Made by a program: the position numbers and the translations under genes. A stretch of 64,000 nucleotides of DNA, from positions 171,762 through 235,761 of the IMG/VR virus record IMGVR_UViG_3300046171_000231; one strand, written 5' to 3'. Shown one piece after another: positions 38,167 through 64,000 of this stretch. Below the pieces are notes generated by a model. The model made no database searches. It was not told the origin of the DNA and saw only the letters and a program-made list of their open reading frames with translations. Position 1 is the first letter of the stretch; every line of letters starts with the position of its first letter.

Positions 38167-41100
38167 TCAAATTCCAAACACTCTAATCGCACCTGATGAT
38201 CTAAGACCTCTAAGAGACGATGTAGTGTAGTTCTTTCTTTGTATTGTTGGGAAGGTTGCCAAACCAGAATTGACTGTCAATCCAGTCACTCCGATTGAAA
38301 TTGGACTACTACTCCTAGATGCATTATATATTCTACCCCAACTGATTCGACCTAGATGTGTAGCAATACCAGGATTACTATTATTAAAGTTTCCTGTGAG
38401 TCCAGCTCCCACACCAGTAATTTGTCCATTCTGAATATTACAAGTAATCTCACCATTTTCACCAGTAGAAGCAACTGCGTGAACTTTATAGATGTTATCT
38501 AAGAAAGTTGATCCAATTCCCACAATGGATGAATTATGAGTATCAACAGATGTAATACCAGTTCCAACTGTTGTATCTTTGATAAACACTGGATAGTTTA
38601 CTAATAATGAGTTCGCTGCTTTATCTGCCCTAAAGAAGAACTTAAGTGCTGATTGACCACTAACTGTAGTTGTACTTATGCCAGTAATAATACCAGTAAA
38701 TCCTTCTACATTACTAATTGATGTAATTTTTTCAGTTTTAAAAGTTGGTAAGTTAATAATAACTTGTGGTGGAGTTACGTTTGAATAACCAAATCCTGCA
38801 TTAGTAACATTTATCGCTGATATTGAACCATTTGTAATTGTAGCAGATGCTGTCGCAGTTGTTGCCACTCCTACAGTTCCATCAGATTGTATGAATGTTG
38901 CAACTCCAACTAATGGAGAACTAATTTTTACTGTAGCACTATCATATCCACTTCCTACATTTGTAATATCAATTGAAGTTATTGTACCTGCTGCAGATAC
39001 AATCGCTGTTGCAGATGCACCAACATTTACTTCCCCAGAAGTTACAAGAGCATCAACAGTGTTATATTCTAAATTATAGTCACCATCAGTCTCATCTGGA
39101 TTAGTAGCGGTTAAATGATCACCTTTTTCATAGAAGAATACCTCTGCATCGTCAACAAATATACCGTTAGTATTTTGTGTTCCAGATGTAGTTGTGTAAT
39201 CACCAATTATTTTTGAGGTAGGATAGACTTGTGGTTCAAGAATTTCTCTTGATTTATCTATTTTCTTACCACCTAAGATAATATCAACTTTTTGTTTTGT
39301 CCATCTGATTGGTTTATTATTATTTTCATCAATACCAGCTCCAGTGTAAATATCAGTCTCAACAAGTTTTGCACCAAGTAATTCTTTTAATGTTCTTTCC
39401 GCTTCTTGTGAAGTTGTAAATCCAACAGGATGTTTGAATAATCTTAATTCATCACCAATCTTGACTGTTTGTTGGATATCTGCAGTATCTACATCAACCC
39501 CATCTTGTCCTTTGTAGAAGAAGATATCAACTTTTGCTTCAGGTCTTGGTGCTTCAACAAATTCAAATGTAGTACCACCTTCAAATGTATATGCAGAACT
39601 TGGTTCTTGTAAAACACCATTTATGAATATGAGAAGAACTGAGTTTAAATCAATTAATTGTGAACGAGAATTATTAAGATCTTTTTCAAAACTTAGTAAT
39701 TGACCGTTGAAGAATAACGGGAATCTTGTTCTTGAACCATCTTGTAAATTTTGAATACTATCAATAAAGTCTATTTCACCAAATTGCCAAGCAGAGAATT
39801 TATCTTGGAAAATTTGTGTAACCTCTAATTCAAATTCTTGTATTGGTGCGGATAAATGTGATGCAGTTACTAATCCAACTGGTTTAAACTTATCACCAAC
39901 TTTGAATGAATGTCCAGGTCTTGCGATAGAGAATTCTGATATTTCAAAAGTAGTAGATCCAATACCAACAGTTGTTTTAGCAGCACTAACTTTTACATCA
40001 ACTAATAAAAGTGATCCAGAATCAGTTGTTGCACCTATACCCTGTCTTGAAACACCTATAATTGGTAAATTATCATAATTTGGTTCAGGAATTATAATTT
40101 CAGGATTAACATAACTTGTACCAGCAGAAACAATATTAAATGCAAGTGTACCTCCAACACCTACTGTTGCTGTTACAACTGCACCTGTACCACCGCCACC
40201 ACCTTGACCAACATTTAATGTAATCGTGTTAGTTGTAGTTGCAGTAATCGCAGTTTGAATACCAGCGATAGGATCTGAGTTAGGGAAACTTGTCTTAGAT
40301 ACTGAACGAGGATATGGATGGTCTGAGAAGAAATTATCTTTTGAACACTTGAATACTAAACCACCAGTATCAATACCAACTGTATCACTAGTTGTTAATC
40401 CGTGACTTGGAATTGTAAGAACAAGAGTTCCTGTATGAGATGTGTAAACTGCATTTGTTGCAGTAAACGCATTACCAGCAAAGTTTGATTGTCTTATTGA
40501 ACCTACACCAGCACTTACAAATCTATGAACATATGCTTGATCTGTAACACCAATTGCAACAGAACCACCACGATATCCTGAACCAAATGTAAGATCTTCA
40601 AAGAACTCATACGCATTACCACCACCTTGATAAGTATGAGGTATTGTGCTTGCACCTGCCTGAACTTCAAATGTTCTATCAGAAACTATACCAACAACAA
40701 ATAATGGTCTTTCATGATCTTGGAAGATTGTTGTTGTGACACCAACATATCCACCACCACCAATTGTTTTTACTGAGTTTGCAGCAGCGGAAACAAATGT
40801 ATGAACATACTGGTCACTTGCAGCAGATGCACCAACATTAACTCTAAATGTATTTGTAGTTCTGTTACTAACTGTTAGATATTGACCAGCAGCAGGGTCA
40901 GTTGCACGAGGATAACAATGAGTAGAATTATTACTATCTTTGTCACAAGTAAAGCAAATAGAACCCGTATCAAGAACAACAGCATCACCATTTGCTAATC
41001 CATGATTTGCGATAGTTAATACTAATACACCAGTTGCTGGATTATAAGTTGCATTTGTTGGTGTACCAACAACTGTTTTTGGACATACAAATTCTAAACC

Positions 41101-44100
41101 TTTAAGTTTAACAGTATTTGGTCTTTCTAAACCAAATCCATGAACACTGTTTGTAGTAACTGTAATAATACCTGTGAGATTATCATATGCTGCAGTTTGT
41201 ATTCCAAGATTAAATCCTGAAGATGTGCCGATACCAACAATACTTGTTAATCCACCAGTAGCATTTTTAAATGCTTTTACCTTTGCACCTTGTAATGGAG
41301 CATATCCTGTGCCTGGTGTTGAACCTAATGAAACAATTAATCCACCTCTTGGAACTTGGTTTTGATTAATATCAAATTCAGATACGATAAAATCACCATT
41401 TGTAGAAGTGATACCACTGAACTCCACAGTCGATATACCAGCTGTTGTGTCTGATATAAATTCATAATTATTTCCAGTATTGTTAATTGTTTTTGGAGTT
41501 TGGAATACACCGTTAATGAATAAAACACCGTTTCCTACCCCAATACCTGAAGAAGTATTTGCACCACCCACAGTTAATGAATAAGTTTTACCAATACCAG
41601 TAAAGTTATCGGATATATCATCAAACAACATATTTGTTGTATAATTACTCCTTAAGAATGTTCTGCCACTAAAGTCTGCTTTTACAAATGGTAAGTTAGT
41701 TTCATCTCTCCTTGATCTATTATTTCCTTTAGGTGGTTCTGCAAAGAACACACTACTTTCAACTATATTAAATGCACCTCTATGAACCCTCGCTGTAGTG
41801 TTTGCAAGGTGTGAAGTTGCTGCAATACCTAATTGACCTCTTTCAACTTTTACAACTGGTAGAGTCGCAATACCTAATGCTACATCAGTTGAATCATTAA
41901 TTACTCCTTCAGAAACACTTGAGAAACCAACTTCAGTAACTTTCACATACTCATCATCAATTTTAAGGAAGTCGGTTGGTGCAACTGACCCAATTCCACT
42001 TAATACAAACTGTGAAAGTCCAATACCTATATTTGAATCTAAATTATGGGTAATAGAAGTAAATGAAACTGGTTGTTGTACAACACCATCTAAACCAATA
42101 ATTGTTTTTGTTAGTTGTTTTCTCATAGTAAGTTTATGAGAATTACCTCCACCAAATCCTGAAAATGTTACCGCAATACCTGTTGAAACATATTCAGGTC
42201 TTGTATATAATTCAAATCTATTTTCATCAATAACTTTAGCATAAACTGTGCTTGGTAATAATGTTGTTACAACACCAGCAATATTAGATGTTGAACCAAT
42301 AGAGATAGCAGTTCCAGCAATACCTATAAATGTAGAATCAGGAGTATAAGTTAATTCTTCATTTGTGTTAAAGAAATGACTTGGAATACTAACGACACTT
42401 GTTGTAGTGCTGATTGTACCAACAGGATTAAAAGTTTTAGAATAAATTGGAACTTCATTATGTTTTAATACAAAATCTTTTTTGTTAGCTCTAAGACCAG
42501 CAGCACCATCATAAGTTGTTAAGAAAACTTTTTGATTAACAGTACCATAAGTTAAATCAGGAGGTGTGTTTTCAAAATCACTTGCTGTATATAATATTTG
42601 ATTGTAAGATTGTACCTCAATTAATGAATCAAATTCTGCATCTGGATAAAATCTTAAGTTTATGTTGTCACCACTTATTTCACCACCAAATGTTCCAATA
42701 CCTGTTGTTGATCCTGCAGATACAAATGGATATTGAACAGTTAAAATATCATCAACATCACGAATTGATATAACTTGATGAACTGCAGATGTTTCCCCAC
42801 AAGAAACTCTGACTAAAGATTTAACAGTACTATCAATTAATTTGTTTATTGTTGCATATGTTATTGTACTTGCAGTTCCAGTAACATACCCAGATTCTAA
42901 TCTTGCACTTCTTTCAGCACCTGCAGGTTGACCAGCAACAGAAAAACGATAAGTTCCAATTCCAGATGCAGTTGAACCCAAGCCAACAACATTTGATCTA
43001 ACTGTAAGAGGATTAACTCTATCATTTTCAACTTGTAATTTAACTAAATTATTTTCAACTCTTGCTGTTATAACACCAACAACACTATTACTTAAACCAG
43101 ATGATGTATCAACATAAGTTTGAGAAATTGTTGTATCTGTTCCATCATAATCAACAATGACCTCGTTATAGTTCATTTCTTTTGTCAAACTATCTTGAAC
43201 TAATACAGAAGCATGTAAACTGTTAAAATCGTATGAAGGAACTTCAATAATAGATGAAGTTGTGAATCCGACAGTTGTTGATCCAACACCAGCATTTACA
43301 CCAGTTAAATCAACGCTACCGATTCCGTTTGTACCAATACCTGTTAAATCTGTATTGAAATCAATTTTAAGAAGTTTTATGTCATGATCTTTTAAGAATT
43401 TTTCTGTTGGAGTGAATAAAAGATTTTTAGTTCCTGTTGCTAAAATTTCAGTACTAAAATCACCTAATTTAAGTGTTGTAAAATCAGTTGTTTTTTCAAG
43501 AATAAATGCATCATTTTCAGTAGTTAAAGTTACGATTTCTGAGAATTGAATATCAAAAGTATCAGGATCAATAATTTGTACTAGGTAATTTGCAAAATCT
43601 TCAATTAGAGGTTCTATAACAGTATTAGTGCTTTCAAATCCTTCACTAGAAAAATCATCACTTATATCATCGTGTAGTAAAACTCTATTTGTTTTGCATC
43701 TTGTAAAGTCGGTTAAAGTTCTATTTTGAAGTGTTAAAAACTTAGAACCATTAATTCTTGAGTCATAATCCTTTGCAAAGTCAAAATTATTAATCGCATC
43801 TACTCTCTGTTTATCATTAAGCTCAAGTACGTTACCTACATCTAAAACAACACTTTGATTTGATTCACGAACTGTTCCAAATCCAACTTCAATATTAGAT
43901 GTAATTGTAGTATCAGAAAAATTCTTGAGTCCAGATGGATGAACTAAACGATTTATCGGATTAACAAATTTTTCCCATTCAATTGAACTCTTAACTGTAT
44001 AAGATAGGTTCTGATAATAATCATTGTCAGGTATAACTTGGTAATCTTCATTTAACTTACCTATATCATCTAACCATCCATACTCTTGCCTGTTTGAAAA

Positions 44101-47100
44101 ATCAGTTGTGAATTTTGCTTGATTATCTACAATACTTGTTATTTCAGCAGATACGTTACTTAATTCACCTTTAATTCTGTCACCAGTTCTTATTTTATAC
44201 TTACCATCAATTTTTATATAATCATTTCTTACTTCAATAACTTTTAAATCAGTAATGACATCGCCAATTATCAATGTTTCTTTTAATTCAAAAACACCTC
44301 TTGATTGAACTGGTTCAATTACTGGATACTTTTTCTTATTAATTAATGTAGCATATCCAGACTGGAATGTTTTAGCAATTCCAGGATTTGTTGTAACACC
44401 TGCTGTACTAAACTCTACTATACATTGAGTTCCAGCAGTGTAGTTAACTACATCGAAAAACTCATAATTATAATTATCGGAATTGTATCCAGTTCCTTCA
44501 ACGGTGGTAGTAGTGGATATTCCTCCACTTAAAGTACCAATTCCTGCTTCACCTACTCTTTGTATACCTTCAACATAAATTTCATCTCCAGTCGCAAATG
44601 GTTGAGTATCAAATCCATTAATTGGAGTTTCAAGGAAACAAGTTACAATACCAGAATTACTAATTAAAACTGAGTTAATTCCAACACCATTTGAATTGTT
44701 AATTGAAATTATCTTATGTACAACTGAGTCTAATCCAGTAACAGGTGATAATACATCAACTTGTGATATAGTTTGGTTAGGTGTTCTAGCTTGTAAAGAG
44801 AGATTATCAACAACTGTATTTGATATAGGATTGAATACAATTAAGTTAGGTGTGCTCATATAATCAGCACCACCACTTACAATATTAACTGAATCAATAA
44901 TATCGAGATTATCAATATTAACAACAGGTGATATAAATGCCTCTGGACTTAAGGTTTTATCTGAAGAATATTCATAACCTATATCAACTGTTCTTATTTT
45001 TTTAATTCTTCCAATATTTCTTGAAGAAGCAATTATATTTGCATCAGTTCCACTTACACTATTAATCTTTTTAAATTGAGGTAATTTTTTATAGTTAAAT
45101 CCTGGTGAAACTATTTTTAAATCTTTTATCTGACCGTGAACTGCTGTTGACTTGGTAGAGTATTCTAATTTTTCACAATCACTATTTGTATAACTTAAAA
45201 ATTCTGGTATTACAGGTGAAAAATCAAAGGTGTCATCAGTTACGTTAAATATTTTATACTCATTATTATACTTACTATCAATAAATCTTATTTCTGAATA
45301 ATTTGATACCTCAGTATCTGCAGTGCTTATAAATCCACCTTTGGTTAAACCATAATATAGTGTACCTGGCGAAGATGCTGAGTATTGAACTGTAAGTGCA
45401 GCACCTATAGGATCGGTATTATTAGTAGCAATACCAACTGTACCACCAGTACCAACATTAAATGCACTTGAATCTTGTGAACTTAAATATTCGTTTGTGA
45501 GATTTCTGTCATAAAATAATTTAAAGTCAAAATTTAACAAGGTACTACTTGTTAATCCAAAGTTTAATTTTGAATTTTTAACAACATCAATTCTTGGATT
45601 AATTAATGCAATTGATTGATTTCCACCAGTGTTTGCTGTTATATTTACAGTTCTTACTGGATTTGATTTGTTATCTTCAATAGTCTCTGAAAGTTGGAAT
45701 CTTCTACTACTAACTCTATTAACAAAGTATGTTCCTGTACTTAATCCAGTTGCAGCACCATCATAAAATACTTTATCTCCAGTTTCAAATCCATGATCAA
45801 CTATATCAATCTGATTAGTTTCAATATCAGAGGCAGTAAATAATATTGGATCAATAATTAACTTTTCAAATTCAGAATTGTAATTAACAGACACAGGAGT
45901 TGTGGTACCATTTCCAACATTTAAACTAGGTACTACATTCATTCTGATAGTATCACCTTCAACTAGATTATGAGTAGTTGTATTTGCTGCAGATACATTT
46001 GTTGATACTGTTGTTGTAATTTTATCAATATCACCAGTTATTTGTTTTTTATCTGTTTGGAAAGAAATATAATCCTGAAGAAATTCCAGAATTAGATCCA
46101 TTGCTATAAAAATATAAACCCTCACTTGTACTTCCAATTCCAACTCTAGTAGTTAAAATACCAATATTATCTTGACCTTTATTAATAACATATACATCGA
46201 GTGAATTTTGTCCTAAATGTGGTACTTTAAATTCAGTCACTAATGGTGTAGTACCTACATCAAACCTATTTGCACCATTTCTTTTATTTAATGTAATTTT
46301 TTGACCTGTCTTAAATGGATGGTTTGGAATACGGATTGTTCTTGTTGGTATTGATACTACTTCTTTAAATCACCAACAAAGGTGTCTACATCTACAGCAC
46401 CACCATTTGTAGTTCCAACACCAACTGATTGAGGACCATTAAAGTAAATTAACTGATTTGGTTCTGATTCAAATTTTGTTGTTTTAACAGGTATACTAAT
46501 TTTATTATTCAGGGCATCAACATTAGATCCAGCAGTATGTGCGACACCTGTATGTCTTAATACTCTAATAACTTTCCTTTGATCAAATACATCTAATACT
46601 CTTACTTCCTCAACATCTATTACATTTCCCTGAACCAATTCTAATAGAACCACCTATTGCAACATTAGTTGGTAATCTGTTTACATGTATATCTTGAATT
46701 AAACCATTGCCAGATCCAATTGTCATTGTTTTTGAAAGTCCAACTCTATTAGTTGTGACACCAACTTTAAATGAATTAGTTAAATTTACGATAGAGCTAC
46801 TTAACCCAGATATGGATACGGATGTTTGATCATTCAACTCCATAAATGGTAAAAACTGTGCTGTTACTTCGTCATAATTATTCCAAGTAAAAATAGCATT
46901 TTCAAATGTATTAATAGTTGTATCAATACGAGAAATTCCAATACCAACTATCTCATCAACTTCTGCACGGAATCCAGAACCATTTGTTCCTTCATCATCA
47001 AAATCTGTGGTGTCTCCCACTTTATATCCTGTACCACCATTTAAAATTGTAAATCCATCAACACCACCCTTAGTGACCGCTTCAATTTTTGAAATTTGTC

Positions 47101-50100
47101 TTATCTTTTCATAAGATTCTATGACAAAATCATTACCTGCAAATTTTTCATCTACATTGTATGGTAAAGTATTTCTTCTTAATCCAGAATTATTAAAATC
47201 AAATTCTTGATTTAATATTTGATTTTCTGCTATAAATGGTGAACGATATGTATTACCAATAAAGTATGGATATTTACCCTCTAATTTGTTTGTACCTGTT
47301 CCTAATCCAACAGTAGAGAAGTATGCGTATACACCATTTGGAAATTCTGGTGTTTTTCCAAATCTTCCGTTATGAATGTCTAAATCACCAGTTCCATTAT
47401 ATACATGATCTTCGACAAAAAATCCTGCAGAATAACCTGGTGGACGATTTGTAACTCTATTAATATCAGTTACATATGATGGTGTGATTATTTTTAATGT
47501 AGAGTTAATATTATCTGGATCTGAATATCCAAAAGGACCATATATTGGATTTCCATCATATGCCCAACCAACAATTGGTGAGTGACCTGTTATATTACTA
47601 AATTCACCACTTGAAGTGACATTAAATGTATTTTCAAAATTATTAGCAATATCTTGAGAGTAACCTAATATACTGAATCTTAATGTATCTTCTTTTGTAG
47701 ATAAGAATGAATCCCCAAATCTGTGAGTATTATTCAATGTTAGAGATCTAACTCTTGCTGCGTATGATCCGTTGGAACCTCTTGGAAATCCCCTTACCTC
47801 TGTTGATACGCTACTATAACCAATACCTGTGTTTGTTACTATAGCATCGATAACCTGTCCATTTTGAATAACTGGACGAACAACAGCACCTGCACCACCA
47901 CCTGTTGACGTAATTCTAATTTCAGGACTTGAATTATATTCTCTTCCTCTATTAACAACAGCTACATCTGTAATTCTTCCATTTACAATAATTGGTTTAA
48001 ATTCTGCATACCTACCATTTTCAATAGTAACTTTAGGAACAACTTCTTTATCTAAAGTGGTAGAACCATAATTTGTTCCTTCTTCATAAAGATATCCACC
48101 AATTAATTCACCAGTTACTACAGGAGTAATTACAATATTACCAGTAATTGTTGAACCATAAGAAACATCAACATTTACTGTAATCTGAGGAAAATTAAAT
48201 ATTTGGAATCCTTCACCACCAGATTCAAAATTAATATATTTACCTCTATTAAAATCTACTGTTGAAGTTCCTCCAATTCCAGCGTCTGCTAATTGGAATG
48301 TATCGTTTGTTAATTTATTAATGTAATAAGATGATGTTGTTGATAATCCCTGTATCGGTGTAGTTTCTGCAGAATATTCAACTATCTCCCCACTGATCAA
48401 AACCATGATTCTTAAATGAAACAACATTTAATGATGTTGAGATTCCAATAGGTTTTACTCTCAATTTTCGATGAGTGTATCCTGATCCCTCTTCTAAAAC
48501 TTTAACTGCAACTAGAGTGTTTTCTACTTTCTGTTCTAACTTATGAATACCACTTGCAGCAGTGTCTGTTGATAATCCAACAGTGTTTATACCTGCAGTT
48601 CCAAATAATGCATCTGTTGGAGTATTAAATTTCTTACTGTAGATGGATTCACAGATCTTACATAATATGGTGCACCGTCAGATAATGTGCCACTAATTTT
48701 ATTTTCAAGATCATATGCAGTTCCAATACCGATTGGACTGTTTCCATTAGATCCATAATATACGAGTTGCCCATCAGTTAAATTATGATTAGATTTAAAG
48801 GTAATAGTTTCATTTACTATATCAACCCCACCATTAAAGAAAATATCTCTGCTATCAAATAGAAGTTCTCTGTTTCTAGTTCCTAATATTGGTTGTAATA
48901 CACATCCATTTCCGTTACCACCTGTTAATGAAATACTTGTTACTTGATCAATATCAAATTCTTGAGGATCAACAAATACTTCTTTGACTGTACCCTGAAT
49001 TACTGGTTCAACAGCAGCACCAACTCCACTACTTGTTTCAATACCAACAATTGGTGGATTTAAAATATCGTACCCACTTCCACCATTTAATAAGGTCAAC
49101 TGGACTCTAAAGGACCATAATATATTTGATTATCTGAAATAGGTGAACGAATTTGAACACCGTTGATTAATATTCCAATATCATTTGTAGGTATATCTTG
49201 ATTTGATGCTACAAAAAGATTTTGTGATAAAGGAAATTTCCTTATAATTTTATCTGGTTCTAATACTCTACTTGAATGTTTCTGTAAGACAAATCTATGA
49301 ATATCAGTTGTGGATGTAGTTGGACCAACTTGAACTGTACTTGCAGATCCGATTTGAGCTAAAGAATTAAATATTCTAATTTTTGTAATGTCTTGACCTG
49401 GTTCGGGTATAACAGGGTCTACAAAGTATGTTCTTCCAGTATCTAAACCAATCAGTCCTCCACCTTCGGGTTGATATGTAACAGCATCACCTTGTATAAA
49501 TTTTATATTTCTTGAAAGAGGAAAATTAATAAAACTGTATCGGTCATTTAAAGGATTAAATGCGTCTAATCCAGCAGCAGTTCCTCCAGTAAGAGTCTCT
49601 TCAATAATATCAGTTGTTATATCATAACTTGGTAGAGAATTTGATGCAACATAACCATCAGTGTTTCCATCAACATAAACACTTAAAGTGTCTGCAATAA
49701 TATTATCATTACCCTTTACTATAGATACACCTGTACTAGATGCCTTTTCAATTTTTCTACGAATATCATATTCTTGATTTGCATTTTGTGTAAATCCCGC
49801 AATGTTTGAAACTGTTATCTGATTTAATGTTGTGTTAATACTCGCAACAGTACCACTACCAGCAATAACCTGTTCATTTCTCTTTAAGATATCGAATCGA
49901 TCACCAACTTTAAGAGATGATTTATCAATTAGTGTTTTTAAAGTAAATGTTGAACTACCTACTGGAATATCAACTTGAAATCTTGAACTTGTATTGTAAA
50001 TCCATGAATTTGCAAAAATTTGTTTATAATTTTCACTATCATTTTCTATTTTTTCACCAATATTTTTAACGAAGAAGTTTTCACCTTCATTAATTAAACT

Positions 50101-51342
50101 AATATCTGTAATTGGAACTAACTCAGATAATACACCAGTAATTCTTAAATCAACTCTTTTTGTTAAATCTCCATTTTCATATCCAAAGATAGTCTCATTA
50201 TCTCTAAGATCATCTGCAGTTCCTATACCAACTGCTACACCAGTGCATCCAAAAAATTGATTTATTGATTTTGAAGTATAATCAATTTTAGAATTAGATC
50301 CACTAATGACAGTTCCAGTAGTACCAAAACCAACAGTTGAATCAACATTTATTATTGTTGCACCTGCATCAACTTTATCAAGAACTCTAGTCTTGCCTGG
50401 TACTGTGAATACACCTTCAATTAAGTCACGATCACTAAATCCAACAAATAATGCAATTTTATAATAATTTCTACCTTCACGTTTAATTATTTCAACTTCT
50501 GAAACTGATGCATTAGTTGAAGTATCTGTTGATTTGAATATTGTTTGACCTGTTAAGTTTTGAGGTTCACCAGTTCCAATTACATCAGCAACTACAACTT
50601 CACGACGTATAAATTCTGCATCAGATGGTTTTATAAGATTACCCTCTAAGTCAATTATTCTTGCTTCAACTCCATATAATACTTTGAATAAGATTCTTAC
50701 AGATTCTTCAATACCTTTTGATTGATAAAATGAACGAGCAAACTTTACAAAATTACCTACATCTAAGGTTGTTGCAAAATCATTATTTTCTAAACCTGGT
50801 AAGAAGGTTTTCTTCATTTTTTTGAAGAATTCCTGAATGAATAATACAGATAAGTTTGTTAATGATGATCCAGATGTATGAGAGGTTGCTGATGTTTGAT
50901 TAAATTTTAAACTCTCACGATTAATTTCAAGTAAAGAAGAAGAAATACCAACATTATATCCTGTAATTCCACTAAATCCACGAATACATCCAGTAAATGT
51001 TGTTGAAGTTATTCCAGTGTAAGATATAATTTCATCATCTATTTTAAGTAATCCATATTCAGATGGAAATCCTTTTGTACTAGGAACAGTTATAGTTGTA
51101 TCAGTAGTAGATATTCCTGCAGAAATAGTTGTAATTCCAACAACTACTTCAGGAACTAAATTATCTACTTTTAAATATTGATCAAGATTCGTAATTAAAT
51201 CAGATGCACCACCTTGAAACTCTTGTGAAATATAATATTGCTTTAAAAACTCTGTAGCATTAGGAAAATCAGATACCACAAATTCTGGTAACTGATTCTC
51301 AATAATGGTATTGACTTGTATTCTTTTGTCAATTTGTGACAT
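38167..51342 (-). CDS. gp7: Baseplate wedge initiator gp7 (~4400 aa), split by at least six indels
   Basis: MSQIDKRIQVNTIIENQLPEFV...FLKQYY...FYQSKG; HSPIVGWAYDGNPIYGPFGY; LVHPSGLKNFSD. Fragments 49096..51342, 48587..49099, 46610..48427, 46357..46653, 46049..46240 and 38167..46143 join with single-base fixes. Confidence 0.88.
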
Positions 51343-55214: not shown

Positions 55215-55289
55215 TTACCGATGTGGATTGTAATACTGTATAAACAAGAATAGTATAAAGATAATCAGTAGAATTGTGAGTCCTACCAT
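55215..55289 (-). CDS. 24-aa single-pass membrane peptide
   Basis: MVGLTILLIIFILFLFIQYYNPHR; coupled to the upstream stop. Confidence 0.55.
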   Translation of the reverse strand: MVGLTILLIIFILFLFIQYYNPHR

Positions 55290-56053
55290 TATATCACTCT
55301 TGTCTTTTCGTGTCCAACTCTTACTTGTGGGTCACACCAGATTTCAAATCCTGCTTCCTTTGCATCGAGGCAGAATGATACATCTTCACCGCACATATCT
55401 TGAACTTCTCCTGATTCAAATACCTGCATCTTTGGAGCAAACCAAGGATAAGGCATTTCTTTATGTTCAAAGACACCTTTCTTTATTAATAACCAACCGA
55501 AACCAGTATAGTCAACTGTAAATGGTTTCTTTCTCTTACTTATACTTTCGATAGTTTCATGATTCATCACACCACCGTTTGTGCGGAAATCATCTTCTTC
55601 TAACCAGTGTGCAACTGATGTAGTCTTTCCATCTTCGGTACAATACCAACCTGCTGCAATATCTTTTTCCATTAGAAGTATCTGATAGAACTTCTCGACA
55701 CTGAATACAATATCACTATCAATCCATAATTGATAATCATAATTGAGTTTACCATCCCAAGGTAACTGGTCAGGTCCTCGAAGAACGTTTGCACCAAGAC
55801 ACTTACATCGGGCAAAATTAACCATTGATGAATAATCTTGACTGATTTGTATACTTGCTCCTGATTGAACCAAATCAAAACATAAAGATACAAAAGACTT
55901 GAGAAATGTATAGGATACTCCACGACCAGGTAGACAGAATACAACTGTCTTTCCTTTAATCATTTCCTTTGCTTTTGCATAATCATATTGTGGTGCAGCT
56001 GCTGCCTTCTTTGGTTTTGGGTTCTTTGCTTTTACTGTAAATCCTTTCGCCAT
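55289..56053 (-). CDS. GT-A fold glycosyltransferase-like protein
   Basis: VVFCLPG...NFARC...YDYQLWIDSDIVF (DxD)...TGFGWLLIKKGVFE...GEDVSFC...VGH. Confidence 0.85.
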   Translation of the reverse strand: MAKGFTVKAKNPKPKKAAAAPQYDYAKAKEMIKGKTVVFCLPGRGVSYTFLKSFVSLCFDLVQSGASIQISQDYSSMVNFARCKCLGANVLRGPDQLPWDGKLNYDYQLWIDSDIVFSVEKFYQILLMEKDIAAGWYCTEDGKTTSVAHWLEEDDFRTNGGVMNHETIESISKRKKPFTVDYTGFGWLLIKKGVFEHKEMPYPWFAPKMQVFESGEVQDMCGEDVSFCLDAKEAGFEIWCDPQVRVGHEKTRVI

Positions 56054-59548: not shown

Positions 59549-60142
59549 TCATATGATACTCTTTGCGAATTTCCCTGTTAAGTAAAATGCCATTCCCTTA
59601 TTTTTCAATGTTACCCCTTTATAGGTTAATGGGTGATAAGGTTTTGAATCTTTTGTTCTGATTTGTAGTAAACCATTTAATCCTGTAATGGTTGTTAACT
59701 CTTTATCGTCTAAGTATGCAAATTGAACTTGTTCTGCGATATATTCAAAATCTTCTTCTAACATTGCATAAATTTCGGGGTTTGAATTTTCATTAATTGT
59801 TGTAGTTCCTATGAAGTTGTTTTCTCTGTCAAATGCAACAAATAATGTATTTTTTAATTTGATACCAACTTTAGTTTCTGGGAATGTTTTATAACATTCG
59901 TCATCAATTAATTCTGGTAATGTGTGTTTAAGTTGAGTAACCGCAATTGATTCCCCTTTAGTAAACGACTTCAATTCTCCGTCTACCATATCAGTAAGTT
60001 TAGAACTATTGGGAATACCAAGTGCAAGTTCTAACAACTGTCCCCGAACCCCCTTATTTTTTCGGGGTTTTGGTAGTGTGGTAAAATCAACCTTAGTTAG
60101 ATTGAATTGTACTTCTGAGAGGGTTAAAGTCATTTGCTTCAA
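59549..60142 (-). CDS. MutH/Sau3AI-family PD-(D/E)xK endonuclease
   Basis: NKGVRGQLLELALG...TD...GELKSF and LQIRTK match MutH/Sau3AI motifs. Confidence 0.8.
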   Translation of the reverse strand: MKQMTLTLSEVQFNLTKVDFTTLPKPRKNKGVRGQLLELALGIPNSSKLTDMVDGELKSFTKGESIAVTQLKHTLPELIDDECYKTFPETKVGIKLKNTLFVAFDRENNFIGTTTINENSNPEIYAMLEEDFEYIAEQVQFAYLDDKELTTITGLNGLLQIRTKDSKPYHPLTYKGVTLKNKGMAFYLTGKFAKSII

Positions 60143-60875: not shown

Positions 60876-61298
60876 CTACCAGTTGTTACAGAATACATAT
60901 CCGTTATTGAATGTATAATCCCATGAGAGTCCATCTTCCCATGTTTTCTCCCAGTCGATAGCAACCCAATAGGGCATGTCTGGCATCCCGTAGCAATCAT
61001 TTAAAAAATTCTCAGCAAATTCTGCTTCGCTGTCGAACCTTCCATGATACGCATCATTAAGGTGTTCAACATCCATGAGATCAAATTCCTCAAGAAATGC
61101 GTCAACTGTCTCTTGGTCGTATTCTTCAACCATTCTTGCGTAGTCTTCAAAATAACAAACAAAGTCTTTTGCTCCGTGAGTTTCGATAAACTCTTTCATT
61201 TCGTCTTCGTCATGCCCGTCTTCAATTAATCCTTCTAGGTGTTCTTGGGCATGTGCTTCAGTTGGAAATGAAGTTGTTGGGGCGATTTCGTAAGGCAT
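60876..61298 (-). CDS. ArdA-like antirestriction (DNA mimic) protein
   Basis: Very acidic; DAYHGRFDSEAEFAENF...PYWVAIDWEKTW resembles the ArdA C-terminal domains. Confidence 0.72.
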   Translation of the reverse strand: MPYEIAPTTSFPTEAHAQEHLEGLIEDGHDEDEMKEFIETHGAKDFVCYFEDYARMVEEYDQETVDAFLEEFDLMDVEHLNDAYHGRFDSEAEFAENFLNDCYGMPDMPYWVAIDWEKTWEDGLSWDYTFNNGYVFCNNW

Positions 61299-61629: not shown

Positions 61630-61797
61630 TTATGAACTGGCACGTCTTCGCTTGATTTCGTGTTTGGCAAGTGCTAGTCTTTGGTTCTCTTCTTCAGTGT
61701 TGAGAAGTTCCATTATACTTAATGCACGTATCATGTTACGTAACCCGACCATCTCCATGCGACGCACGTAACCCGCCTGATTATAGGTGTCGATCAC
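61630..61797 (-). CDS. Small early protein (55 aa)
   Basis: MIDTYNQAGYVRRMEMVGLRNMIRALSIMELLNTEEENQRL...; stop lies inside palindrome 4. Confidence 0.55.
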   Translation of the reverse strand: MIDTYNQAGYVRRMEMVGLRNMIRALSIMELLNTEEENQRLALAKHEIKRRRASS

Positions 61798-61934
61798 TTC
61801 ATCACCTCATCAACTAGGTTATCGTAAGTTTGAATGTCCCAACCTTTCTGCTCTGGGACTTCCATTTCGTATGCGAACATGACTAGTTCTTGTAGGTAGT
61901 CTAGTTGCGATTGTGTCAATGTTAGTTGTCTCAT
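61794..61934 (-). CDS. Small early protein (46 aa)
   Basis: MRQLTLTQSQLDYLQELVMFAYEMEVPEQKGWDIQTYDNLVDEVMK. Confidence 0.6.
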   Translation of the reverse strand: MRQLTLTQSQLDYLQELVMFAYEMEVPEQKGWDIQTYDNLVDEVMK

Positions 61935-61971
61935 AGGGGTGTGTGTATCTAGTTGTATTATAGCATGTGTG

Positions 61972-62012
61972 TCTAGTCGAGATTGTTAAGACATGCTTAA
62001 GTCTCGACTAGA
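61972..62012. repeat. Inverted repeat TCTAGTCGAGA...TCTCGACTAGA (hairpin of the array decamer)
   Basis: Perfect 11-bp arms with an inner TTAAG/CTTAA pair. Confidence 0.8.
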
Positions 62013-63360: not shown

Positions 63361-63425
63361 ATAACAAAAACAAGAGTCTGGGGTAGGACTGATAGAAAAC
63401 CTTCGCCACTCCCCGAGCTCTGAAA
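63361..63425 (+). ncRNA. Candidate small structured RNA 2 (homologous to RNA 1)
   Basis: TTGTAA-17-TATAAT promoter; GGGGTAGG...TTCGCCACTCCCC core. Confidence 0.5.
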
Positions 63426-63489
63426 TAATAACTGTAACCTTCTGTAATATTTGGGATGGATCTTATCGCAATCCAGCTGCCCCGTCAAC

Positions 63490-63665
63490 TTAAGTTGTGC
63501 CACTTCGGATACTGTCCACTGGCACCCCGTTCTCTAGCAATTTCGTGTTAGAATGGATAAACTCATCGGGAAAAGAGTTTATGCTTTTCGCCCAATCAAT
63601 TTTTTCGACCTTCAGGTCATCCCAACATTCGATGTCTAGCGTGACTGTGTACACACGCTTATGCA
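63490..63665 (-). CDS. Small early protein (likely start MHKRVYTV)
   Basis: TTGACA-18-TATCAT promoter at 63726-63697. Confidence 0.55.
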
Positions 63666-63747
63666 TGATAATGTGTATCTCGAAGTGTATGTACATATGA
63701 TAGCACACATCTAGATGACGTGTCAAGTATATGAGTATATGCACACA

Positions 63748-63928
63748 TCTCGACTAGATGATATGATGTGCGGGTGTCTCGACTAGATTCATATTCACAT
63801 ACAGTATATGAGATGATGAATGATGATGAGAGTCTCGACTAGACTTATTATATGTGTGATATATCTCGACTAGCTTCTATGAGAATTATGAGTATCTCGA
63901 CTAGGAAAAATTATCAGACCTCGACTAG
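63748..63928. repeat. Array of six (T/C)CTCGACTAG decamers with unique spacers
   Basis: Copies at 63748, 63777, 63833, 63864, 63895 and 63919; spacers 19, 46, 21, 21 and 14 nt. Confidence 0.9.
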
Positions 63929-63967
63929 TTTTTATGTCAGGATTCTCAGAAATTTATGCCCGTGATG

Positions 63968-63996
63968 TTGACAAATCGCCCGTTCGATGCTACGCT
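63968..63996 (+). promoter_or_regulatory. Sigma70 promoter pointing out of the window
   Basis: TTGACA-17 nt-TACGCT with extended TGn. Confidence 0.65.
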
Positions 63997-64000
63997 CGCT

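What the first reader, a model, noticed from the sequence alone, without database searches (positions are those of the whole stretch)
63700..63996. Iteron-like TCTCGACTAG array between divergent promoters at the strand-switch region
Seen: six direct copies of a 10-mer (start-to-start 29, 56, 31, 31 and 24 nt) with unique ATG/ATAT-rich spacers, plus a degenerate copy (CACATCTAGATGA, ~63706). The array is non-coding and bounded by a leftward TTGACA-18-TATCAT and a rightward TTGACA-17-TACGCT promoter. Established: T4 oriE uses short iterons next to an early promoter. Inference: a replication origin, packaging/organising site or multimeric protein-loading platform. The repeats are too short and the spacers too irregular for CRISPR.
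Basis: partly seen in the sequence, partly recalled or inferred. Interest (0 to 1): 0.62.

Follow-up and report, generated by a model that had tools for sequence, protein, structure and literature searches.

The report
Conserved operator array in marine cyanophages
The repeated 10-mer is real: it is the core of a 13-base palindromic protein-binding site, clustered once per genome next to early promoters in a large group of T4-like phages of marine cyanobacteria, most likely an early-gene control switch that may also mark the replication origin.

Summary
There are five exact copies and one near-exact copy of TCTCGACTAG at the stated spacings, far above chance. The window is the end of a 235.8-kb T4-like cyanomyovirus contig, a relative of Prochlorococcus phage P-SSM2. 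The contig's ends overlap by 610 bp, so the array also occurs at the contig start.

The 10-mer is the core of a near-palindrome, ATCTCG-A-C(T/G)AGAT. Clusters of it occur in more than 117 IMG/VR contigs, in P-SSM2 and in S-T4, once per complete genome. Syn9, S-PM2, P-HM2 and P-SSM4 lack it. In close relatives the sites are 98% conserved against 73% for the spacers.

Sites lie on or beside sigma-70-type promoters. In P-SSM2 one fills the spacer of TTGACA-17-TATAAT. On the far side of the array, a conserved rightward promoter fires into ORF-free DNA that holds lineage-specific repeats (cyanobacterial DnaA boxes in some lineages) and a 10%-GC stretch.

There is no coding strand switch; the flanking genes all lie on the minus strand.

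Best reading: an operator array for an unidentified dimeric DNA-binding protein that controls divergent early promoters. It is probably coupled to a T4 oriF/G-like origin. No binder was found, and replication was not testable.

The parts
63748..63928 (+). Main array. Six direct copies of the TCTCGACTAG core at 63748, 63777, 63833, 63864, 63895 and 63919. Each is the centre of a 13-bp near-palindrome ATCTCG-A-CTAGAT.
   Evidence: logo; 98.1% identity in site columns against 72.7% in spacers across six relatives.
63705..63719 (.). Decayed site (palindrome CATCTAGATG) in the spacer of the leftward promoter. It is a full operator at this position in relatives L089, L073 and L103.
   Evidence: Loose-end variants in metagenome contigs carry the full site.
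63697..63726 (-). Leftward promoter TTGACA-18-TATCAT with TG before the -10. It drives the first small early gene.
   Evidence: 11 of 12 matches. Conserved as TTGCAT/TTGCGT-17-TATCAT in relatives.
63726..63753 (-). Second, weaker leftward promoter-like element. Its -35 position is filled by the first operator (TCGAGA-16-TATACT).
   Evidence: 9 of 12. The same 'operator, then 7-9 nt, then -10' layout occurs in many other lineages.
63968..63996 (+). Rightward promoter TTGACA-17-TACGCT with TG-n extended -10. The predicted start lies just beyond the window end (contig about 612).
   Evidence: Promoter plus the first roughly 20 transcribed bases are conserved in about 47 loci and in P-SSM2.
63490..63666 (-). 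First leftward gene: a 58-aa very acidic protein (PHROG 12516, 'family 0'). It is the most conserved neighbour of the array and is transcribed away from it.
   Evidence: Present in 71 loci, oriented away in 69 of 71. AlphaFold2 pLDDT 84, no fold match.
61973..62011 (.). Second locus. An inverted pair of the same site, 29 bp apart. The proximal site occupies -33 to -21 of an extended -10 promoter.
   Evidence: The pair is conserved in close relatives L024, L054, L067 and L073.
61957..61962 (-). -10 hexamer TATAAT, preceded by TG-c, of the promoter controlled by the inverted pair. It precedes the 46-aa ORF at 61794-61934.

Best explanation
The array is a cluster of binding sites (operators) for one dimeric, sequence-specific DNA-binding protein that has not yet been identified. 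It forms the control region at the head of the phage's early transcription. Each 10-mer is the core of a 13-bp near-palindrome. Sites sit on or next to sigma-70-type promoters. Occupancy would therefore time, and most likely shut off, two divergent transcripts. The leftward one encodes tiny acidic immediate-early proteins. The rightward one is non-coding and runs into an A+T-rich element. That rightward promoter-plus-A+T-rich module has the anatomy of a T4 oriF/oriG R-loop origin, so the same region probably doubles as the replication origin, with the array as its regulator or organiser. Shown: the motif, its symmetry, its conservation, its once-per-genome occurrence in the complete genomes checked, its placement relative to promoter elements, and a DNA-level constraint on it. 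Inferred: that a protein binds it, the sign of regulation, and any role in replication.
For: Statistics: 11 matches against 1.5 expected. Logo: 545 unique instances in 117 loci give A-TCTCGAC(T/G)AG-A-T, and the G form is a perfect 6+1+6 palindrome. Occurrence: one cluster per complete genome. G002, G003 and P-SSM2 each have one. S-T4 shows two only because its record carries about 9.5 kb of terminal redundancy. The own genome has one array plus one inverted pair. Selection on the sites: 312/318 identical cells in sites against 543/747 in spacers, and copy number changes by whole units. Promoter overlap: in P-SSM2 a site fills the spacer of TTGACA-17-TATAAT; in L073, L089 and L103 a site fills the spacer of the leftward promoter; the own second locus has a site at -33 to -21 of TG-c-TATAAT; many lineages show operator, 7-9 nt, -10, about 20 nt, operator, ATG, or an operator directly after the -10. 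DNA-level constraint: in 66 loci some sites lie inside a real 46-51-aa acidic gene (equal to PSSM2_098). Its third codon positions vary most (0.35 against 0.22 and 0.18). Yet its DLD(E/Y) motifs are written GAT CTC GAC GAG/TAT in 63 of 83 cases. Leu is CTC in 83% of them, against 6% genome-wide. Origin-like features: a conserved rightward promoter followed by no ORF. The 50-nt GC minimum is 10% at +81 in the own genome (3 of 500 controls as low), and averages 15% against 29% in 33 lineages. Two or three tandem TTTTCCACA boxes sit at the equivalent place in 7-8 lineages against a background of 0.04 per kb. That sequence is the cyanobacterial DnaA-box consensus (PMC5987646). T4 oriF/G are a promoter plus an A+T-rich unwinding element, and oriE has iterons and an early promoter (PMC3016281).
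Against: No cognate binding protein was found. Neighbouring small proteins have no Pfam DNA-binding domain. The conserved acidic neighbour has no RHH or HTH fold and no PDB match, and it is missing from P-SSM2 and 47 loci that still have the array. In the own main array only the first site and the decayed site touch a promoter; the other five lie 30-200 bp upstream. That many sites is more than a simple operator needs. Spacing (24-56 bp) is not helically phased. Syn9, S-PM2, P-HM2 and P-SSM4 lack the motif and any equivalent 9-mer array, so the system is not general to the family. The predicted rightward RNA has no significant structure (z = -1.1). RNA-library contigs cannot show its start, end or strand. 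GC skew is uninformative because all genes share one strand.
Confidence: 0.5

Rival explanations
1. The array is purely a replication origin of the iteron type. An initiator protein oligomerises on the repeats, melts the neighbouring A+T-rich DNA and loads the phage helicase. Any promoter overlap serves only transcriptional activation of the origin.
For: The cluster occurs once in each complete genome checked. It lies in an 860-1000-bp ORF-free gap. Five to ten sites is typical of iteron origins. An A+T-rich element and, in some lineages, DnaA-box triplets lie alongside. The own genome has direct repeats in the array and an inverted pair at a promoter, as in iteron plasmids. T4 oriE offers a precedent.
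Against: No Rep-like or initiator gene lies next to the array. The sites are palindromic, of mixed orientation in relatives, and irregularly spaced. The own genome has no DnaA box at the locus. Even for T4 oriE the role of the iterons is unproven. Sites sit precisely inside core promoters.
Confidence: 0.28
2. The repeats are remnants of coding sequence. The 10-mer is merely how a repeated Asp-Leu-Asp-Glu/Tyr peptide of a tiny acidic gene is written, and in this phage that gene has decayed, leaving a functionless array.
For: In 66 related loci an ORF of 46-51 aa reads through several sites in one frame and shows a coding-type substitution pattern. The own genome keeps only a 29-aa remnant, read from the sequence.
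Against: Codon choice in those motifs is fixed far beyond coding need: CTC 83% against 6% background. In the own lineage the frame is broken, because TAG falls in that frame and the spacings are not multiples of 3, yet the sites are 98% conserved. Sites also occur upstream of the ORF, in promoters and in both orientations.
Confidence: 0.05
3. The array is a packaging or terminal-repeat signal. It marks the physical ends of the genome (pac or DTR boundary).
For: The array lies inside the 610-bp repeat at both contig ends. The S-T4 record's roughly 9.5-kb terminal redundancy contains its cluster.
Against: The two end copies differ at 17 positions, which fits an assembly overlap of co-occurring strains better than a true DTR. 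In P-SSM2, G002, G003 and G004 the cluster is internal, at 66, 86, 137 and 82 kb. By established knowledge, T4-like phages package by headful with permuted ends.
Confidence: 0.05
4. The sites are used by a host factor (a cyanobacterial transcription factor or nucleoid protein) and not by a phage protein. This would let the phage read host state, as NtcA and PhoB sites do in other cyanophage promoters.
For: No phage-encoded binder was found. The motif is invariant across phages of 32-51% GC that infect both Prochlorococcus and Synechococcus. Host DnaA boxes occur next to it in some lineages.
Against: The motif matches no cyanobacterial regulator site known to me (recalled, not tested). Host genomes could not be searched here. 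The one bacterial-genome scan was swamped by chance hits.
Confidence: 0.12

Closest known systems
[quoted passage not shown]
   Same: A sigma-70 -10-type promoter fires into non-coding, extremely A+T-rich DNA within about 100 nt. The module is compact. It lies in a T4-like phage that encodes gp59/41/61-type replication proteins.
   Different: The promoter has a normal -35 plus an extended -10 and no MotA box. It is flanked by an array of palindromic sites and a second, lineage-specific repeat set. No R-loop or replication data exist.
T4 oriE iteron cluster
   Same: A cluster of short repeats lies next to an early-mode promoter in a T4-type genome and is conserved at the syntenic site in relatives. 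Function is likewise unproven.
   Different: [quoted passage not shown] Here the sites are 13-bp palindromes with irregular 24-56 bp spacing and mixed orientation in relatives. No sequence or gene-neighbourhood homology to T4 oriE was shown.
Multi-operator control regions of phages and plasmids (lambda OR/OL, P1 C1 operators, KorB 13-bp palindromic operators, omega/CopG-type repressor arrays)
   Same: Dyad-symmetric sites of about 13 bp occur in several copies and overlap the -35 element, the spacer or +1 of sigma-70 promoters. They lie between divergent promoters.
   Different: No repressor gene was identified. The phage is strictly lytic and T4-like. Up to 10 sites are packed into 250 bp. 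Some sites are embedded in the coding sequence of a tiny acidic protein.
Iteron origins of plasmids and phages (lambda ori, P1 oriR, R6K gamma)
   Same: Repeated initiator-type sites lie next to an A+T-rich region, with DnaA boxes in some lineages. Direct repeats occur at the array and an inverted pair at a promoter.
   Different: The repeats are shorter than the usual 17-22 bp. There is no 22-bp phasing and no adjacent rep gene.

Membership tests
Operator array of a dimeric transcription regulator | Binding site with dyad symmetry | tested here: met
   The logo of 545 instances gives ATCTCG-A-C(T/G)AGAT. The G variant is a perfect palindrome.
Operator array of a dimeric transcription regulator | Sites overlap core promoter elements (-35, spacer, -10 or +1) | tested here: met
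   P-SSM2 promoter spacer. Relatives' leftward promoter spacer. Own second locus at -33 to -21. Many other lineages. In the own main array only the first site and the decayed site do so.
Operator array of a dimeric transcription regulator | A cognate DNA-binding regulator is encoded or known | tested here: not met
   Pfam and PHROG scans of 20 neighbouring proteins found no DNA-binding domain. The acidic neighbour has no matching fold. The phylogenetic profile is confounded by clade.
Operator array of a dimeric transcription regulator | Occupancy changes transcription | not testable with these tools
   Only assembled contigs of RNA libraries were available.
Iteron-type replication origin | Three or more direct repeats of about 17-22 bp in one orientation with regular (about 22 bp) phasing | tested here: not met
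   The core is 13 bp. Own spacing is 24-56 bp. Spacing peaks at 24-25 and 29-33 bp, and orientation is mixed in relatives.
Iteron-type replication origin | Adjacent initiator (rep) gene | tested here: not met
   None was recognisable on either side.
Iteron-type replication origin | A+T-rich unwinding region and DnaA boxes nearby | tested here: inconclusive
   A+T-rich element present: 10% GC, 3 of 500 controls as low. TTTTCCACA triplets occur in 7-8 related lineages but not in this genome.
T4 oriF/G-type R-loop origin | [quoted passage not shown] | tested here: met
   The definition is from PMC3016281.
T4 oriF/G-type R-loop origin | Persistent R-loop and origin firing early in infection | not testable with these tools
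   No infection time series exists for this phage. The runs are metagenome contigs. GC skew is uninformative.
T4 oriE | [quoted passage not shown] | tested here: not met
   The spacing is irregular. RepEA/RepEB homologues were not searched for.
CRISPR array | Repeats of 21-48 bp with uniform unique spacers and cas genes | tested here: not met
   The 10-13-bp sites have 14-46-bp spacers of uneven length. The spacers are homologous between relatives.
pac site / direct terminal repeat | Located at fixed genome ends, with identical terminal copies | tested here: not met
   The end copies differ at 17 of 610 positions. The cluster is internal in other complete records.

The most novel reading that the evidence does not exclude
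This locus is the principal replication origin of a large clade of marine T4-like cyanophages (P-SSM2, S-T4 and more than 100 uncultured relatives). It would be an R-loop origin fired from a conserved early promoter, gated by a protein that binds the palindromic array, and assisted by host DnaA in the lineages that carry DnaA-box triplets. The tiny acidic gene whose codons are forced to spell the same DNA motif would be part of the switch.
Probability: 0.3. Interest if true: 0.75.

Novelty: new variant of a known kind. Interest (0 to 1): 0.6.

Why it matters
T4-like cyanophages are among the most abundant viruses in the ocean. In the literature I could search, neither their replication origins nor the control of their early genes is defined at the sequence level. 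They also lack the MotA/AsiA system of T4 (recalled, not tested here).

This element is conserved, is present in two cultured phages (P-SSM2 and S-T4), and occurred only once in every complete genome checked. It therefore gives a concrete, testable handle. The array can be used as bait to find the binding protein. The two promoters can be mapped. Early replication can be profiled around one defined site.

The partial embedding of the DNA motif in a real acidic micro-gene, with codon choice dictated by the DNA site, is an unusually clear case of dual coding.

Tried and rejected
(1) Near-identity search of the region against GenBank phages found no match.

(2) Rfam and tRNA scans of the locus found nothing.

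(3) Literature string searches for the motif, and searches for cyanophage origin, DnaA-box or palindrome descriptions, returned only primers and unrelated papers.

(4) The scan of bacterial genomes for the array, with the T/G variant allowed, was swamped by chance hits in high-GC genomes. Host genomes therefore could not be tested for the palindrome.

(5) The conserved acidic neighbour was tested as a ribbon-helix-helix repressor. The AlphaFold2 model is confident (pLDDT 84) but has no two-helix core and no PDB match. The protein is also absent from P-SSM2 and from 47 array-bearing loci. It was rejected as the obligatory binder.

(6) A phylogenetic profile compared array-positive with array-negative genomes. 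It is confounded because the positives form a clade. The best hit is a glycosyltransferase-like 254-aa protein and not a DNA binder.

(7) Cumulative GC and AT skew is monotonic because all genes share one strand, so it carries no origin signal.

(8) A structured small RNA from the rightward promoter is not supported. The fold z-score is -1.1, with only a weak A+T-rich hairpin.

(9) Read evidence came only from assembled contigs. One rRNA-depleted metatranscriptome covers contig 65-656 and nothing from 701 to 1600. Strand, ends and DNA carry-over cannot be judged.

(10) Syn9, S-PM2, P-HM2 and P-SSM4 were searched for an equivalent array of any exact 9-mer. None was found outside coding repeats.

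(11) A PDB sequence search with the Kyano_Gp96-domain neighbour gave no hit.

Full report
**What the sequence is.** The window is the last 64 kb of a single 235,761-bp contig with 35% GC. Its large proteins are T4-type baseplate and tail-sheath proteins. The tail sheath is 76% identical to that of Prochlorococcus phages P-SSM2 and P-SSM5, and the next best matches are Synechococcus myoviruses. It is therefore a T4-like cyanomyovirus (Kyanoviridae) from seawater. Of 24 listed runs, 20, from 14 seawater/viral metagenome studies, hold the stretch or a part of it.

Contig positions 1-610 repeat positions 235152-235761 with 17 substitutions and no indel. The mismatches fall in two patches. That pattern fits an assembler closing a circular or permuted genome across co-occurring strains better than a true terminal repeat. 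The array in the window (63748-63928) is therefore the same element as contig 358-538. Everything to its right had to be read from the contig start (locus L001; window coordinate = L001 coordinate + 63390).

**The observation.** In the contig-start copy all six are exact. With one mismatch allowed the window has 11 matches against 1.5 expected, and none of 100 shuffles reaches that. Genome-wide, exact copies occur only in this array and in an inverted pair 1.75 kb away, at window 61973-61982(-) and 62002-62011(+).

The 'strand-switch' is not real. A greedy ORF map puts nearly all genes of the genome on the minus strand, including those immediately left and right of the array. The array sits in an ORF-free gap of about 860 bp. 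The gap runs from the start of a minus-strand gene (window 63666) to the end of another (L001:1136).

**What the repeat is.** In these loci the motif, with the common variant TCTCGACGAG, forms clusters of 3-10 sites in both orientations. A logo of 545 unique instances extends the core to A-TCTCGAC(T/G)AG-A-T. This is a 13-bp near-palindrome, ATCTCG-A-C(T/G)AGAT, and the G form is perfectly symmetric. Start-to-start spacing peaks at 24-25 and 29-33 bp.

Of the 117 loci, 106 carry, within 3 kb, genes shared with cultured cyanomyoviruses. In complete records the motif occurs in a single cluster: G002, G003, P-SSM2, and S-T4. S-T4 shows it twice only because the record carries about 9.5 kb of terminal redundancy. 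Syn9, S-PM2, P-HM2 and P-SSM4 lack it, and they lack any comparable non-coding array of another exact 9-mer. The system therefore belongs to one broad clade and not to the whole family.

In an alignment with six relatives that are 74-81% identical, site columns match the window in 312 of 318 ungapped cells. Spacer columns match in 543 of 747. Copy number changes by whole units. Metagenome contigs from the same samples carry the intact variant.

**Relation to promoters.** In P-SSM2 one site exactly fills the 17-bp spacer of a consensus TTGACA/TATAAT promoter that points into the early genes. In L073, L089 and L103 a site fills the spacer of the leftward TTGCAT/TTGCGT-17-TATCAT promoter. At the window's second locus a site occupies -33 to -21 of a TG-c-TATAAT extended -10 promoter, and a second site lies 29 bp upstream. 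Close relatives keep this pair.

Across other lineages two layouts recur. One is operator, 7-9 nt, -10 hexamer, about 20 nt, operator, start codon. The other is an operator directly after the -10. In the window's main array, the site nearest the genes abuts a TATACT -10-like hexamer, which is followed by the TTGACA-18-TATCAT promoter. This placement is what one expects of operators of a dimeric regulator.

**Neighbours.** Clustering of ORFs around all loci shows that the most conserved neighbour is a very acidic 50-58-aa protein (window 63490-63666, PHROG 12516). It is present in 71 loci at a median of 86 bp and is transcribed away from the cluster in 69 of 71. Its AlphaFold2 model is confident (pLDDT 84) but matches no solved fold and is not ribbon-helix-helix. 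It is absent from P-SSM2 and from 47 array-bearing loci. I do not take it for the binder.

A second family is a 46-51-aa Asp/Tyr-rich protein that ends in LAYRHYA and equals the annotated P-SSM2 gene PSSM2_098. It lies between the operators and the first family in 66 loci. Its third codon positions are the most variable (0.35 against 0.22 and 0.18), so it is a real gene. Its Asp-Leu-Asp-Glu/Tyr motifs are nevertheless written with the operator sequence in 63 of 83 cases. Leu is CTC in 83% of them, against 6% genome-wide. The DNA motif is thus under selection of its own, even inside coding sequence.

The window's lineage has lost this gene. Only a 29-aa remnant frame is left (read). Its T-variant sites put a TAG in that frame, and its spacings are not multiples of three. 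Here the array is non-coding.

**The other side of the array.** About 40 bp beyond the last site lies TTGACA-17-TACGCT with an upstream TG. This promoter, its spacer and the first roughly 20 transcribed bases are conserved in about 47 loci and in P-SSM2. The -10 varies between lineages only in ways that keep a promoter. No ORF follows it in the window's genome.

Downstream comes a second set of short repeats that differs by lineage. The own genome has an ACAGATT type. In 7-8 lineages these are two or three tandem copies of TTTTCCACA, about 200 bp from the last operator, against a background of 0.04 per kb. That sequence is the DnaA-box consensus of cyanobacteria (PMC5987646).

Next comes an extremely A+T-rich stretch. 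In the own genome it is 10% GC over 50 nt at +81, and 3 of 500 random controls are as low. The mean over 33 lineages is 15% against 29% for controls. In 36 loci a GIY-YIG homing-endonuclease gene has been inserted on this side. The predicted transcript has no significant fold (z = -1.1), only a weak A+T-rich hairpin. No Rfam family matches.

**Interpretation.** Four lines of evidence show a protein-binding element: the symmetry of the site, its selective conservation, its position on core promoter elements, and the DNA-level constraint inside a gene. Its first-order role is control of the divergent early promoters (confidence about 0.5 for this as the primary function). The sign of regulation is inferred. 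Sites at -27, in spacers and at +1 suggest repression or shut-off. Activation in place of a -35 element, as MotA does at T4 middle promoters, is not excluded.

The rightward promoter followed by an ORF-free, A+T-rich element has the anatomy of the minimal T4 oriF/oriG origins: a promoter plus an A+T-rich unwinding element, primed by an R-loop. T4 oriE combines short repeats with an early promoter (PMC3016281). Three further points make a coupled origin plausible: the cluster occurs once in each complete genome checked, the gap is large, and some lineages carry DnaA boxes. None of this could be tested. GC skew is monotonic. Only assembled contigs of metagenomic and metatranscriptomic runs were available. 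One rRNA-depleted RNA library covers L001:65-656 and nothing from 701 to 1600, which is compatible with transcription of this region but does not prove it.

**Rivals.** Four rival readings were weighed.
- A pure iteron origin (0.28) lacks an initiator gene and regular direct repeats.
- A decayed coding repeat (0.05) is contradicted by the codon bias and by conservation where the frame is broken.
- A pac or terminal-repeat signal (0.05) is contradicted by internal positions in other genomes and by non-identical end copies.
- Use by a host factor instead of a phage protein (0.12) is a variant of the main reading. I could not test it, because my one scan of bacterial genomes was swamped by chance hits in high-GC genomes and returned no cyanobacterium.

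**Novelty.** Searches of the held literature for the motif, and for cyanophage origins, DnaA boxes or palindromic early-promoter elements, found no description. The kind of element, an operator or iteron array at an early-promoter or origin region, is well known. This motif, its clade-wide conservation, its single occurrence per complete genome checked and its partial embedding in an acidic micro-gene appear to be undescribed. I rate it a new variant of a known kind, with interest 0.6.

Noticed in passing
window 63391-64000 = contig 235152-235761, repeated at contig 1-610: The contig ends overlap by 610 bp with 17 substitutions and no indel. The substitutions fall in two patches (169-241 and 515-556). 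This looks like closure of a circular or permuted genome across two co-occurring strains and not a true terminal repeat.
   Followed up: partly
Related loci, e.g. L009:9820-9957(-); P-SSM2 NC_006883.2 66124-66279 (PSSM2_098): A 46-51-aa Asp/Tyr-rich micro-gene overlaps part of the operator cluster in 66 loci. Its DLD(E/Y) codons are forced to spell the DNA motif (Leu = CTC 83% against 6% background). The window's lineage has lost it.
   Followed up: yes
Related loci, about 200 bp beyond the last operator (e.g. L009, L021, L078, L005, L015, L096, L118): Two or three tandem copies of TTTTCCACA, the cyanobacterial DnaA-box consensus, occupy the position where this genome has ACAGATT-type repeats.
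   Followed up: partly
Related loci, e.g. L068:4447-5208(-), L047:399-1154(+): A GIY-YIG homing-endonuclease gene of about 250 aa is inserted just downstream of the conserved rightward promoter in 36 loci. This genome lacks it.
   Followed up: no
L001:640-681 and 797-811 (contig start, beyond the window end): Dispersed repeats of the GATTCTATACAGATT type lie in the ORF-free DNA downstream of the rightward promoter. A 10%-GC stretch follows at L001:688-737.
   Followed up: partly
window 60876-61298 (-) and 59549-60142 (-): Early-region genes include an ArdA-like anti-restriction protein (PHROG 36653; weak Pfam ArdA). They also include a protein with weak MvaI/BcnI-nuclease similarity, annotated MutH in one Synechococcus phage.
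   Followed up: no
window 55289-56053 (-): A 254-aa protein (PHROG 1574) with weak glycosyltransferase similarity and a DSD motif. tblastn E-values are 1e-135 to 1e-155 in all four array-bearing reference genomes, 3-9 kb from the array. The protein is absent from the four array-less ones, and is probably just a clade marker.
   Followed up: partly
window 38167-46101 (-): A 2644-aa protein matches a giant 'baseplate wedge subunit' PHROG (2885). Two further pieces of the same family lie at 46610-48427 and 49096-51342.
   Followed up: no
L022:6098-6233 and L043:1644-1713: Two IMG/VR contigs carry the same 10-mer as tight tandem repeats, with an 18-bp period x8 and a 15-bp period x5. The second lies in a 496-kb contig. 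Neither shares genes with cultured cyanomyoviruses nearby. They may be unrelated or a different use of the motif.
   Followed up: no
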